A DNA stretch of 64,000 nt from Oculina patagonica (Eukaryota): contig NC_135759.1 of the NCBI RefSeq assembly GCF_052425735.1, forward strand, positions 34,782,001-34,846,000, given 5' to 3'. The notes below the pieces were generated by a model, which did not search any database, had not been told where the DNA came from, and worked only from the letters and a program-made list of their open reading frames with translations. The stretch's first letter is position 1; each line of letters starts with the position of its first letter. Below, in pieces: positions 814-5,464 of this stretch. A program made the position numbers and the translations under genes.

Positions 814-3800
814 TCATTGCTTCATGTTCTTTTTCTCAGGCCTTTTGTGGTGATGCATAGCTTTCTTGTGTGATCGTCTGAGTAGTCTTGTCACATGGAG
901 TTCTAATTGTTCCTTTTTTATACACTTACTGCATTCTTTGTGGTTATTGTACCAGCATCTGTTAACAAATAAAAAAGAACAAAATTTAAATAAAAAATAT
1001 CCCTAAAAGTGCTTTGCAAGAATCATCTTTACGTGTAGTGTCGTCGATTATTGCGAAAATCAGAATATCACATCGTCCTTACAGAGAGAAAACATATGTT
1101 CTAAACAAATAGCGATCGAAATTAAAAGTTATTTCAAGGTTACACGAGTAATGTCATAAAACCGCTTTCCTCCACAAAGGCTTCATCAGTGTTGGGGGAA
1201 AGGTGAAAAAACACGAAGAATGAAAAATAGGGGGAGTGCGGGAAACGACGGGAAGGGCGAGCCTCTCATCATTTCCCAGCCCGTACAAAAAATAAAGAGG
1301 CCTCTGCGAGGAGAGAGTCATAAAACGAAAATTTTGCCAGATATTTCATATCGGGAAATCACGTGATTGCTAGTGTCTCTCTCACGTGATAACGTCGTCC
1401 AATAGCGTTACGAGTGTGATTGAAATTGTTTCCCATTTCACGAAATCTTGTCCAAAAAATAAAAGTACTGAAGGGGAATCTTTGCTAGATAGCTCAGGCT
1501 AAGTGATGTAGTTAGAATATGTTTACAGCTCAATAACACTTACGGTGGCGTGTGACAGCACTTGCGACAAAACTGCCGGTGACGGTGATGTTGCTTGTGC
1601 GTTGAGTTCGGTTCAATTCTTGACGAAGAGTTTGCTGTGTTAGAGATTTTTTCTTTTGGTTGGACCTCGAATTCTTGTGAGTTTTCTACTGTTTCGTCAA
1701 CTGCCTCTGTGGCGGCATTATCTGTAGACACATTACAAGTCATGATCAGAATTACACTAAAAGACGAAAAACTCCCCAGTGACAAAATAAAATAAATGGT
1801 GTTTGTGGTAAGCTCGGTACAAACACAATGAGAAAGATACCGGAGTTGCTCTGGAAAACGAAACCGAGTGCTTCCAACGGGAATCTAACACACGATCTTC
1901 GCGCCACTAATCACGAGGTCCTTTGTTATTGTGAATACAGTTTTGAGAGAGGTGTTTAGCAAATCATGGAATCTTTATAAAGAATCTACTGTACAGATCA
2001 ATGCAATAAATCCGACCAACAATTATCGTAATATCTAATGTGGAAAGCCTACATCAACAGAACAGTCATCGATTAAGAAAAAAAAAATACAAATAATCTC
2101 AGCAAAGGAAAATTATCTAACTTTTTTCATTATTTCAGTTCTTGTCTGTGTTTGTTTAATTCGAAATGACGGAGGAGCCTTTGTCAGCCACAATTTAGAA
2201 TTCGTTCTTTTCTGAAACATCATGCATCTCGCCTCGACCAAGCGCTGCTTGGTTAACTTTCACGAACCCTGTGAGTATCCGGCCGCTCCTTCTACCCCTC
2301 GCCCCTGCTCCCCCGCACTGGGATGTTTTTCAAGAGCTGACTTCTTGTCCGTCCCGCCGTGACAATTGAGTGTCGTATGATAGCGGAGAAATGCCGTGAG
2401 GAAAACATCCGTTTCGTTTTATCGTTTGTTTTTGACTTCCTACGCAGATCAAAGTGTTGAACGCAGGTTATCTTGCAGTACTACCTCTACTATTTATTGA
2501 AAAACAAAAATTATCAAGGTTTTTTTTCTGTCGCATAACTCCACGTACGTCTTTAAGAGAAAACGCAAAACCTAGATTATTAAATCAATCATTTTTTTAC
2601 AGAGGAAGAGCTCTTGCACTAAAGGACTACAAACTAATTAGACTGCAGCAGCTGTTTTAAAAGTATTATTTCAGCCGCTCTCCAAAAATCTGAAAACATC
2701 CTTCAGGCTTTTCACTTCTGTTTTCACTTTGCTAGCGACGCGGGCTCTAAACTATCCACTTCTGTATGAAGTTCACGGCTTGGATGGAAGATCTTTCCTT
2801 CTGAGAACCCGCTGTTAAAATTCTAAAAGATGGTTATTGATTATATGGCTGAATGCCTTGCTCGCTACACAACCGATCTCTCTCTTTACAATTGCAACTG
2901 ATATAACAGCTAAGGACATAAATAAAGAAAAAGTTCAGGGGGACTTTGTACAATCTGTCCCGGCTTGTAGAAATGTACGTTCAAGTTGATAAGGTGAGAT
3001 AAGTCCGGCTTTCTGGCCCATCGTTTTACTCAACATGAATGTAAATTTTTTTCTTATGCAATAATCAAATCGTCAAAGCAAATGTCTCATGGAGCGGAAC
3101 TGAGTCTGATCACATCTCAACAAATTTTGGGGTTGAAAGAGAGAGGAGAAAGAGAGAAAGCCCCTCGTTTGCTTAACTCAGTTTTTTTGGAGCATTGTTT
3201 CCATGCGTAGAGGCAAGGCCCGGTCTCAGGAACGAGTTCACAGAATAAAATTAAGCTTGTATAATTAACATATTTGTAATTGCAAGAACAATTAATTTCC
3301 TAAGAGATTACTGATAAATTGTGAAAGTATTTTTTAATTGTTTTTCTTAAGCACGCAATCGTAAGATGGAGTTCTCGATAGGCTTGATTGCTTTCCTTCG
3401 CGTGCGGAAAGAGAAGACCGAATTCAATTAGAATGTTTTTAGTCAGGAAGCTTCAAAATCACGCCCAAGCTAATCATCCAGAGCAAGAGAATATAATATA
3501 AAGGGTACTCCTGTATTCTGTGTTTTAAATCCGACATTCCCTGTACGTATAAACTTAGTTAAATATTGCTTATAATTTGCATGTCTGCGATCTATATGAT
3601 GTTCAACTTGCGATGAAGGTAATTTAGCAATTTGAAAACGTTACTAAAATGTCATTAATGGTGATCAAAACATCAATGGCTGTTTTCTTAGTTGATTTAT
3701 CGTGTTTGATCTATCGTTATGTAAAATTGATATTTGTTTGGGTTGGAGCAGTATGACCCTATTCTAACTGACAAAACCAATCAATTATCCACTACTCAAA

Positions 3801-5464
3801 ACAAGCGGTCAAGATTATAAACAAACCCCAAACCGGTCACGTATAAATGGTATCTAAGTTCACAACCTTAAATTGCCGCAAAATATTTTATTTCCAAGAT
3901 CTGTGCGTCGATCTTAGACGGCGCGGTTTGTTTTGCCTGATAAAGGAAACTTTCCTGTGAGTCACAGCTCTGAAATTGGAATAATTGAGTGAAATCGTGC
4001 TTCCAGTTTCCGATCGAAAAAGCAGGAGTTCACCGGAACTCGTAAGTCTCCAGCTCACTAGAAGGTTACCCAGTGTACAGTACAGAGATGAAATACTCTG
4101 TAATTGACTTGCGAAGAGAAGCGGCACAAGTTGCAAATTCTAGCGAAATCGTAAACATATGCTTAGAGTTACAATACAACTGTGTTTAAATTTAATTTCA
4201 TTTGTTATGCACAAAAATGTCAACTGAACGGACAGTTTACCTCACTCAGTCAAATATATAAAACACAACTAAAAGTACGACAGCCTAAAGCGCAGTCCAT
4301 TTTAGAGGGAAATACCTCATATCTCAGTGATAACACTTTACACTGAACATTACCACTATTTTGCAATAATGAACACAATGTTTTCTGAATAAATACAGGT
4401 ATGTAGCTTTTGATCCCATAAAAAACGCACTAAGTTCGGTTCGCTTAATCAGAACTAAAGGCAGACAACATTTTTCTAGATAACATTGTTAACACGCAGC
4501 ATACAAAACAAGGAAACACTTTGCAACAGGAAGCCAGTTTTTACGGGGGTTATTAAATGATCGACCGTTCATGATAAGTGAGGTTGTTTGCGTGCTCGAC
4601 GATTTTAAATGGGCGGAGCCCAAAACGTTGCACCGGAAACAATTTCAGTATGGGCTGCCGTCTCGCCAATGGCCCTGGGCTATTGTACCGTTGATCAACG
4701 AAAGATGAAAGAAACCTTCGCACGTTTTAAGCGAGTGTTTATTACGATTCAGCTATCTCGGCTGTGATAAATTTAGATCGCTTGAAGTCGATCAATCAAT
4801 ATTATTCGTGGTCGTAGAAGTTTTGTCCCAAAATAAATCTCGCTGTTTTTTCGCTATTTTTCTTTTGACTCGATTGCCTATTAAAATTCTGTCATTAAAT
4901 AGTTCTGCGATTTCATGAAGCGATAAAGGGATAATCTGACTGAAAGTCATTGGTATCTAAGAATTAATAGTCACAAATTTAGTCAGAAATGTCTTAATTA
5001 AGTATTTAAAATATATTTGGCGCACGAAGTTGAGATAAAAAAGTTACAAGTGAAAACAGTACTGATTTTCTCAAGAGCGGAAACCGTTTCTTAGTCGTTT
5101 TCGCGGTTTCCTTTGCCGGTCAAACGAGAGTTTAAGCCAACACTCGCTGGTTTAAGAAAACTTCAATATCCACAAATATATCCAAGATAGTCTTAGAACT
5201 GTAATCAATTGCCTGACACTAAACATATCTTCAGTAACCCTTGAGTTTTTTAAAATTAGAAAGAGAGACCTTTACTCGGTTGATGGAATTAGAGAGAGAC
5301 AATCATGACAATTATGTTAGTAACCTTTCGACTGTGTTGAACGTGCATCAAATATTGATAATTTACTTGCCTCTCCTGAGCACAACAATAAGACAGGACA
5401 CAACCAGTACTAAGGCAATGGAAAATGCTGCACAAAATGAAATACAACTTCTTGTCTTGGCCAT
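814..5464 (-). CDS. Predicted 138-aa secreted or signal-anchored Cys-rich protein (3 exons)
   Basis: Exons 5464-5371 (gccATGG; MAKTRSCISFCAAFSIALVLVVSCLIVVLRR; donor AG|GCAAGT, phase 1), 1721-1544 (ctacag| acceptor; DNAATEAVDE...FCRKCCHTP; donor GTAAGT, phase 2), 958-814 (taacag|; PCWYNNHKECSKC...KNMKQ*). Phases chain without stops (417 nt). Minus-strand AATAAA near 544-539 and 287-282. No homolog recognised. Confidence 0.6.

What the first reader, a model, noticed from the sequence alone, without database searches (positions are those of the whole stretch)
814..5464. Hidden 3-exon gene: prepropeptide-like protein with an alpha4/7-conotoxin-like cysteine core
Seen: three exons splice in frame to a 138-aa protein with a 31-aa hydrophobic leader ending RR, an acidic spacer with two N-x-S/T sites, HHRHR, the core FCRKCCHTPPCWYNNHKECSKC, KK, and a His/Lys/Arg-rich tail. 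Established: the inner CC-X4-C-X7-C spacing is the alpha4/7-conotoxin framework. Against alpha-conotoxin PnIA (GCCSLPPCAANNPDYC) it shares CC, PP, C, NN and C. Inference: a convergent venom, antimicrobial or signalling peptide precursor with a possible third disulfide from the flanking Cys. The Cys pattern does not match ShKT or SCRiP as I know them. The core is split by an intron and exon 1 seems to use a GC donor, so predictors could miss it. Caveats: a 15-residue resemblance can be chance, and CxxC...CxxC could bind zinc instead.
Basis: partly seen in the sequence, partly recalled or inferred. Interest (0 to 1): 0.85.

Follow-up and report, generated by a model that had tools for sequence, protein, structure and literature searches.

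The report
Conserved stony-coral six-cysteine orphan gene
The three exons are a real gene, already annotated in Oculina patagonica, for a small membrane-anchored or secreted protein whose 22-residue six-cysteine core is almost unchanged in stony corals; its likeness to cone-snail toxins is only a shared cysteine spacing below the family threshold.

Summary
Minus-strand exons 5464-5371, 1721-1544 and 958-814 join in frame to 138 aa. This is residue for residue NCBI's [quoted passage not shown], so the gene is real but not hidden. A second first exon (12492-12387, GT donor) gives a 142-aa isoform. Transcript contigs from related corals break exactly at both junctions. The GC donor is conserved in Orbicella and one other coral. 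Relatives were found only in stony corals (Oculina, Orbicella, Stylophora, Pocillopora, Acropora, Porites), and all are unnamed. All six cysteines and the spacing C-x2-CC-x4-C-x7-C-x2-C are kept. The core is 83% identical between lineages and the spacer 33%. The RR and KK "processing sites" are not conserved. The leader is an uncharged run of 22-25 aa, which is transmembrane length. The basic tail is a conserved amphipathic helix. Pfam's alpha-conotoxin precursor model scores 11-19.7 bits in the members checked, always under its 21.6-bit cut-off. There is no PDB or fold match, and AlphaFold does not fold the core reliably. Best reading: a lineage-restricted, N-terminally anchored protein carrying a strongly constrained extracellular disulfide module with an endogenous role. 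A cytosolic zinc-binding module is the main rival. Venom or antimicrobial use is unsupported.

The parts
12387..12492 (-). Alternative first coding exon 1a (35 codons plus 1 base). It encodes a different MAK... hydrophobic anchor and has a GT donor (G|GTTAGT).
   Evidence: tblastn of P0002 residues 1-35 is 100% identical here. Sequence and donor were read. The same exon type is present in the coral locus L003 and in Stylophora isoform X2.
5371..5464 (-). The hydrophobic run, residues 6-29, is encoded by 5378-5449.
   Evidence: A related transcript (L001) aligns further upstream, to about 5657, which implies a 5' UTR on the same exon.
5365..5370 (-). GC-type splice donor GCAAGT of intron 1b.
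   Evidence: The same AG|GCAAGT follows the orthologous exon in Orbicella faveolata (L004) and in coral locus L003. Transcripts L001, L005 and L006 join at this point.
1544..1721 (-). Exon 2: spacer with sequons, His/basic stretch and first half of the Cys core (F82 to P90 are encoded by 1546-1572; the P91 codon spans the splice junction). GTAAGT donor.
814..958 (-). Exon 3 coding part: second half of the core (C92 to C103 at 922-957), basic amphipathic tail, and stop at 814-816.
   Evidence: NCBI's model and the orthologues end at the same place.

Best explanation
This is an intact, expressed gene that is already annotated but uncharacterised (Oculina patagonica LOC144644392). It belongs to an undescribed protein family detected only in stony corals. 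Each member has four parts: an N-terminal hydrophobic helix of 22-25 residues, a poorly conserved and probably disordered spacer that carries N-glycosylation sequons, an almost invariant 22-residue module with six cysteines (C-x2-CC-x4-C-x7-C-x2-C, with invariant TPPCWY and NH), and a basic amphipathic helix. Two alternative first exons supply two different anchors. The most likely mechanism is inferred, not shown. The hydrophobic helix directs the protein into the secretory pathway and probably stays as a signal anchor. The C-terminal part then faces the lumen or the outside of the cell. There the six cysteines would form three disulfides and present a rigid, strongly constrained binding surface for an endogenous partner. 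Release by cleavage at the basic residue that always precedes the core is possible. The match to the alpha4/7-conotoxin spacing is most likely chance or convergence.
For: Shown:
- The model is identical to NCBI protein P0001.
- Cross-species transcripts support both junctions.
- The GC donor is conserved in two other corals, and the neighbours are syntenic: lipase upstream in L003 and TCP-1 chaperonin downstream in L003 and L004.
- Orthologues occur in Oculina, Orbicella, Stylophora, Pocillopora (3 species), Acropora (3) and Porites (2).
- phmmer of P0001 against 1.84 billion representative proteins returned 9 hits at E <= 0.001. One (P0012) was judged a repeat artefact. Of the rest, one is the window's own protein, two proved to be Stylophora and Acropora proteins, and the others are unlabelled family-like fragments.
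- Only six core variants exist, and all keep the spacing.
- Identity by region: core 83%, TM 49%, tail helix 44%, spacer 33%.
- The uncharged hydrophobic run is 22-25 aa in nine of ten sequences (19 aa in one Stylophora isoform), with maximum Kyte-Doolittle averages of 2.1-3.3, above 2.8 in nine of ten.
- AlphaFold gives a helix at 10-35 with pLDDT about 85 in both runs.

Supporting the luminal or extracellular side (inference):
- The number of invariant cysteines is even.
- Every lineage keeps at least one sequon in the spacer. The product of the chance probabilities is 0.011 if the lineages are treated as independent.
- Flank charges favour N-in in most members.

Supporting a functional tail:
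- R115 and K123 are invariant; L117 and S120 are conserved in at least 90% of sequences.
- The hydrophobic moment exceeds shuffles in 5 of 7 lineages.
Against: The topology is not settled. In Acropora the flank charges are reversed, at +3 after the helix against +1 before it. A long, very hydrophobic anchor behind a very short N-terminus can also insert N-out. No signal-peptide or topology predictor was available. CxxC-x13-CxxC plus an invariant His also fits a zinc site. AlphaFold gave pLDDT of about 80 for the core in one run, but only in 1 of 5 models, and below 50 with the deeper alignment. There is therefore no structural support for any fold. The lineages in the sequon test are related, so 0.011 overstates the evidence. 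No Oculina RNA was available. There are no expression, localisation or proteomic data, and no paper mentions any of the accession numbers.
Confidence: 0.5

Rival explanations
1. Same gene and family, but opposite topology. The short N-terminus is translocated and the C-terminal part is cytosolic. The Cys/His module (CxxC ... CxxC plus C87, C92 and H97) binds zinc. The basic amphipathic helix lies on the membrane or binds a partner. This would be a small membrane-anchored metal-binding regulatory protein, with an architecture like that of stannin.
For: - The core contains CxxC-x13-CxxC, with the second CxxC directly before the predicted helix 106-127.
- H97 is invariant, and His-rich stretches lie on both sides of the core.
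- Basic residues directly follow the hydrophobic run in all members, and the Acropora flank charges favour C-in.
- The anchor is long and highly hydrophobic and sits behind an N-terminus of 3-6 residues.
- The tail carries +8 to +15 net charge.
Against: No zinc-finger family in Pfam matches at E <= 10. Most members have a net negative flank after the helix. Sequons are retained in every lineage. H88 is Q in three lineages. The spacer, rich in Ser, Thr and Asn, looks like an extracellular stalk.
Confidence: 0.25
2. This is a prepropeptide whose leader is cleaved, whose pro-region is removed at basic sites, and whose 22-residue core is released as a convergent alpha4/7-conotoxin-like venom, antimicrobial or signalling peptide.
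For: - CC-x4-C-x7-C is kept in all six core variants.
- Pfam Toxin_8 (alpha-conotoxin precursor) is the family matched by the most members: 18 of 20 at E <= 10, with a best score of 19.7 bits and E 0.001 in Orbicella.
- A K or R always lies 1-2 residues before the FC that opens the core.
- The core is far more conserved than its flanks, as in peptide-hormone precursors.
- The tail is a cationic amphipathic helix.
Against: No member checked reaches Pfam's 21.6-bit cut-off, and the members share one core, so they are not independent tests. Six cysteines are invariant, not four. RR and KK are not conserved. A conserved tail of 33-43 residues follows the core. The hydrophobic run is transmembrane length and is conserved. 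The residues between the cysteines are near-invariant across the family, and there is one copy in each genomic locus examined (window, L003, L004). Venom and antimicrobial peptides usually show variable loops and gene expansion (established knowledge). A signalling-peptide version of this reading is not excluded and overlaps with the best explanation.
Confidence: 0.12
3. The three exons are a chance assembly of open frames and not a gene.
For: None beyond the general ease of finding short spliceable frames in 64 kb.
Against: The model is identical to an independent NCBI prediction. It has spliced transcripts in related species, conserved splice sites and synteny, and 42-70% identical orthologues in six genera.
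Confidence: 0.01

Closest known systems
Alpha4/7-conotoxin precursors (conotoxin A superfamily; Pfam PF07365 Toxin_8)
   Same: The spacing CC-x4-C-x7-C, Pro in the first loop, basic residues before the cysteine region, and a hydrophobic N-terminus followed by a spacer. It gives a consistent sub-threshold Pfam match.
   Different: It is below the curated cut-off in every member checked. There are six invariant cysteines, not four. A conserved tail of 33-43 residues follows the core. The hydrophobic segment is transmembrane length. The loops are near-invariant rather than hypervariable. The gene appears to be single-copy. The taxon is a cnidarian, not a cone snail.
Lineage-restricted small cysteine-rich proteins of corals (SCRiPs; damicornin/AmAMP1-type ShK-related peptides)
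   Same: It is a small cysteine-rich product with a hydrophobic N-terminus, restricted to stony corals, and has no relatives in other animals at the sensitivity used here.
   Different: The cysteine pattern is different. No ShK match appears among the Pfam matches listed at E <= 10. It has a long anchor-like helix and a conserved basic tail. It is a single gene rather than a gene family. This comparison rests on my knowledge of those families, not on an alignment.
Stannin (small single-pass protein: N-terminal TM helix, linker with a Cys metal-binding motif, amphipathic helix)
   Same: The order of parts is the same: N-terminal transmembrane helix, flexible linker, cysteine motif, then a basic amphipathic helix. 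This matters for the zinc or cytosolic rival.
   Different: There is no sequence similarity in any search. The cysteine motif is different and the linker is longer. The resemblance is recalled from knowledge and is a lead only.
Lynx1/Ly6 'prototoxins' (membrane-tethered toxin-like modulators of nicotinic receptors)
   Same: The concept only: a toxin-like cysteine module held at the cell surface and under purifying selection.
   Different: The fold is different (three-finger), the anchor is different (GPI) and there is no homology. Nothing here tests receptor binding.

Membership tests
Alpha-conotoxin precursor (Pfam PF07365 Toxin_8) | Score at or above Pfam's gathering cut-off (21.6 bits) | tested here: not met
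   The window protein scores 12.7 bits, E 0.16. The highest score seen was 19.7 bits (Orbicella). Others scored 18.1, 17.5, 17.0, 15.9, 12.9 and 11.0. 18 of 20 members match at E <= 10 and none that was scored reaches the cut-off.
Alpha-conotoxin precursor (Pfam PF07365 Toxin_8) | 4/7 spacing of the framework cysteines (CC-x4-C-x7-C) | tested here: met
   C86, C87, C92 and C100 in the window protein. The spacing is kept in all six core variants found.
Alpha-conotoxin precursor (Pfam PF07365 Toxin_8) | Four cysteines in the mature peptide with C1-C3 and C2-C4 disulfides | tested here: not met
   Six cysteines are conserved in the core: C92, C100 and C103 invariant, C83, C86 and C87 in at least 90% of sequences. 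Connectivity is not testable with these tools. AlphaFold confidence for the core is not reproducible.
Alpha-conotoxin precursor (Pfam PF07365 Toxin_8) | Precursor plan: cleaved signal peptide, pro-region, mature toxin at the C-terminal end | tested here: not met
   A conserved tail of 33-43 residues follows the last cysteine. The hydrophobic run is 22-25 aa in nine of ten sequences. The RR and KK sites are not conserved. Signal cleavage itself could not be predicted.
Alpha-conotoxin precursor (Pfam PF07365 Toxin_8) | Variable loops between the cysteines and multi-gene expansion, as usual for venom peptides | tested here: not met
   The core is 83% identical between seven lineages, and only 7 of 22 positions vary. 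There is one copy in the window and in the L003 and L004 stretches.
ShK-like / other Pfam cysteine-rich toxin or defensin domains | Any Pfam match to such a domain | tested here: not met
   At E <= 10 the only toxin-type family listed is Toxin_8 (one search shows the first 25 of 27 families).
Zinc ribbon / zinc knuckle modules | Two CxxC pairs placed to bind one zinc ion | tested here: inconclusive
   C83-x2-C86 and C100-x2-C103 are 13 residues apart and conserved. No zinc-finger Pfam family matches and no PDB sequence or fold matches. Metal binding is not testable here.
Single-pass signal-anchor (type II) membrane proteins (a class, not a family) | N-terminal uncharged hydrophobic helix of about 20 or more residues that is not cleaved, with the more positive flank on the N side | tested here: inconclusive
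   Length is met: 22-25 aa in nine of ten sequences, 19 aa in one. AlphaFold gives a helix at 10-35 with pLDDT about 85. Charge bias favours N-in in most members but not in Acropora. Cleavage was not predictable with these tools.
FAM163 (Pfam PF15069) | Score at or above the gathering cut-off (28.3 bits) | tested here: not met
   8.9-9.6 bits, E 1.5-2.5.

The most novel reading that the evidence does not exclude
The family could be a membrane-tethered, alpha-conotoxin-like 'prototoxin'. In this reading an endogenous six-cysteine module is held at the cell surface by one of two alternative anchors and modulates a Cys-loop (nicotinic-type) or other receptor in stony corals. That would be an independent invention of the logic seen in vertebrate Lynx1/Ly6 proteins. 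The near-threshold Toxin_8 matches would then reflect real structural convergence on the alpha-conotoxin fold.
Probability: 0.04. Interest if true: 0.8.

Novelty: new variant of a known kind. Interest (0 to 1): 0.35.

Why it matters
Stony corals have few well-defined genes of their own. Those known (galaxins, acid-rich proteins, SCRiPs) have mostly been tied to calcification, stress or immunity. Here a single-copy gene is found in both deep branches of stony corals (Acropora and Porites on one side; Oculina, Orbicella, Stylophora and Pocillopora on the other). It was not detected outside them. Its 22-residue core is almost unchanged, which implies a specific and important partner. No paper in the searchable library mentions any of its accession numbers. 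It is a compact, well-delimited candidate for expression and structural study. The result also shows that the toxin label should not be attached to it on present evidence.

Tried and rejected
- Pfam on the separate exons and on the full protein gave nothing above a cut-off.
- PDB sequence searches found nothing relevant. The single-protein search had no hit. The family-profile search matched only designed helical proteins, through the hydrophobic helix.
- AlphaFold with 9 sequences gave pLDDT of about 80 for residues 72-127, but in only one of five models. With 20 sequences the core fell below 50. I therefore drew no conclusion about the fold.
- Foldseek against the PDB gave a best E of 4.4, which is meaningless.
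- A 5520-aa hit with 18 matching stretches (P0012) looked like a repeat-domain relative. I judge it a repetitive open frame: it shares a TPPWWY-type string, and no CC-x4-C-x7-C pattern occurs anywhere in it.
- Exact look-ups of P0001, P0017 and P0013 in the contig index found no record.
- Exon 1a was not found within 10 kb upstream of the Orbicella gene.
- Five literature searches on accession and locus names, and one supplement search in the Stylophora cell atlas, found nothing. A search for an Oculina genome paper gave nothing useful.
- The metagenome scan returned 14 further loci at 50-76% identity in the best segment and no more distant relatives.
- The flank-charge rule for topology gave conflicting answers between lineages.
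- I did not send the 138-aa string as typed letters. The full protein was reached through the exon-2 open frame (window:1543-1884:-), which returned P0001 as a reference.
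Full report
**1. The observation**

I read 700-5600 on the minus strand and joined the three stated exons as they stand.
- Exons 5464-5371, 1721-1544 and 958-814 give 417 nt, in frame: 138 codons and a stop.
- Donor 1 is AG|GCAAGT, a GC donor with the usual extended consensus. 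Donor 2 is GTAAGT. Both acceptors follow pyrimidine-rich tracts and end in CAG.

**2. The gene is real, and it is already annotated**

The full protein had no contiguous reference. I therefore searched with the stop-free frame around exon 2 (window:1543-1884:-, region 55-114). Three proteins came back.
- P0001 is 138 aa: [quoted passage not shown].
- P0002 is 142 aa: "hypothetical protein ACROYT_G007323" of the same coral. It differs only at the N-terminus.
- P0003 is a related open frame from another coral.

The N-terminus of P0002 is encoded at 12492-12387, about 7 kb upstream, with a normal GT donor in the same phase. The gene therefore spans at least 814-12492 and has two alternative first exons. 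Each encodes MAK, a long hydrophobic run and then basic residues. The window is Oculina patagonica, order Scleractinia. The claim that predictors would miss the gene does not hold.

**3. Splicing evidence from relatives**
- Transcript-length contigs from related corals encode the whole protein without introns: L001 from run SRR6255890, and L005 and L006 from JGI data sets.
- They align with the window in three collinear blocks that end at 5371, 1723/1544 and 958.
- L007 keeps intron 1 but splices intron 2 at the same point.
- In genomic loci of Orbicella faveolata (L004) and an unnamed coral in ENA (L003), the exon boundaries are the same. The first donor is again AG|GCAAGT.
- Synteny is kept: lipase upstream in L003, a TCP-1 chaperonin downstream in L003 and L004.
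- No Oculina RNA was available to me.

**4. The family**
- Searches with P0001 and with a family alignment found relatives in Orbicella, Stylophora (two isoforms), three Pocillopora species, three Acropora species and two Porites species. There were also unlabelled transcript contigs. All are named "uncharacterized" or "hypothetical".
- phmmer against 1.84 billion representative proteins gave nine hits at E <= 0.001. One is the window's own protein. Two proved to be Stylophora and Acropora proteins. Five are unlabelled open frames that carry family sequence. One is P0012, a 5520-residue repetitive frame.
- P0012 matches 18 times. The stretch I read contains a TPPWWY-type string, and no CC-x4-C-x7-C pattern occurs anywhere in the protein. 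I judge it an artefact.
- A scan of metagenome contigs added 14 loci, all at 50-76% identity in the best segment.
- No relative outside stony corals was detected. The profile search depends on shared words, and the exhaustive search used one sequence, so distant relatives could have been missed.

**5. What is conserved**

In the 20-sequence alignment:
- C92, W93, Y94, N96, H97, C100, K102, C103, R115 and K123 are invariant.
- F82, C83, C86, C87, T89, P90, P91, L117 and S120 are conserved in at least 90% of sequences.

Only six core variants exist among all proteins and loci, and all keep C-x2-CC-x4-C-x7-C-x2-C.

Mean pairwise identity between seven lineages, by region:

| Region | Identity |
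|---|---|
| Core | 83% |
| Hydrophobic helix | 49% |
| Tail helix | 44% |
| Spacer | 33% |
| His/basic stretch | 28% |
| C-terminal end | 20% |

- The RR after the helix is QK, SR or NR elsewhere. The KK after the core is NQ, NN, NS, GK or DQ elsewhere. These are therefore not conserved processing sites.
- A K or R always lies one or two residues before the FC that opens the core.
- The two exon-1 types are each recognisable in Stylophora: 17 of 37 identical for type 1a and 13 of 24 for type 1b, against 6 of 24 between the two types within Oculina.

**6. Anatomy and likely mechanism**
- **Hydrophobic run.** It is 22-25 uncharged residues in nine of ten sequences examined and 19 in one Stylophora isoform. 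Maximum 19-residue Kyte-Doolittle averages are 2.1-3.3, and above 2.8 in nine of ten. AlphaFold predicts a helix at 10-35 with pLDDT of about 85 in both runs. From established knowledge, this is longer than the hydrophobic core of a typical cleaved signal peptide and fits a signal anchor. No predictor was available to test cleavage.
- **Flank charges.** They favour N-in and C-out in most members but are reversed in Acropora.
- **Sequons.** Each lineage keeps at least one N-x-S/T in the spacer. Shuffling gives 0.21-0.78 per lineage and 0.011 for all seven if they are treated as independent, which they are not.
- **Tail.** It is amphipathic beyond shuffles in five of seven lineages.
- **Core fold.** The core reached pLDDT of about 80 in one of five models with nine sequences, and fell below 50 with twenty. 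Foldseek found nothing. I claim no fold.

Taken together, I judge an extracellular or luminal module with three disulfides on a retained or cleaved N-terminal anchor to be the most likely reading, at about 0.5. A cytosolic zinc-binding module is the main rival, at about 0.25.

**7. The conotoxin comparison**
- The inner spacing is, by definition, the 4/7 spacing.
- Pfam's Toxin_8 model is the family matched by the most members, 18 of 20 at E <= 10.
- Scores seen run from 11 to 19.7 bits against a cut-off of 21.6. The window protein has 12.7 bits, E 0.16.
- The members share one core, so these are not independent tests. Four aligned cysteines and a proline account for most of such a score.
- The other defining features fail: six cysteines rather than four, a conserved tail after the core, a leader of anchor length, near-invariant loops, and a single gene.
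- The family is not a member of the conotoxin A superfamily. A functional analogy is not excluded, but nothing supports it.

**8. Novelty and score**

The gene model is public. The family is undescribed: it has no Pfam family, no structure, and no mention of any accession number in the searchable papers. Lineage-restricted small cysteine-rich proteins are a known kind in corals, and this is a new variant of that kind. I score interest at 0.35. It is a clean candidate for coral biologists, but it is not surprising in kind, and the striking part of the original claim (a hidden toxin-like gene) does not hold.

Noticed in passing
window 10249-10320 (+): A tRNA-like sequence lies in the intron between exons 1a and 1b. 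Rfam tRNA scores 38.9 bits, but ARAGORN cannot assign an anticodon. It may be a degenerate tRNA or a tRNA-derived repeat.
   Followed up: partly
window 8410-8946: A 97-bp minisatellite of 5.5 copies with 95% matches lies in the same intron. It produces the repeated short open frames listed at 8360-8685.
   Followed up: no
window 54650-55272 and 55513-56085: A 70-bp array of 8.9 copies and a 297-bp unit of 1.9 copies coincide with a strong AT-skew dip at 54-56 kb.
   Followed up: no
window 32954-33994, 42223-43257, 46453-47373 (+): Three intron-less open frames of 306-346 aa match the rhodopsin-family 7TM receptor model at E 1e-22 to 1e-27. This is a small cluster of single-exon GPCR genes.
   Followed up: partly
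window 35727-39144 (-): Adjacent open frames have a weak reverse-transcriptase match (36865-39144) and a tyrosine-recombinase ('phage integrase') match (35727-36410). This pairing is typical of DIRS-like retroelements. Its state was not examined.
   Followed up: no
window 17860-18405 (-): An exon encodes the N-terminal part of an alpha/beta-hydrolase lipase (Abhydro_lipase, E 1.6e-24). The same neighbour lies upstream of the orthologous gene in coral locus L003.
   Followed up: partly
L007 (JGI Ga0100404_1206891), 18-1863: This transcript contig of a related coral retains sequence matching intron 1 of the window but is spliced at intron 2. It could reflect intron retention or an internal start site. 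It explains the odd N-termini of P0007 and P0014.
   Followed up: partly
protein P0016 (74 aa, source unknown): A relative with a 1a-type N-terminus joined to the spacer has a core region that reads in another frame. This could be a sequencing error or a disabled copy in some coral. It was not traced to a contig.
   Followed up: no
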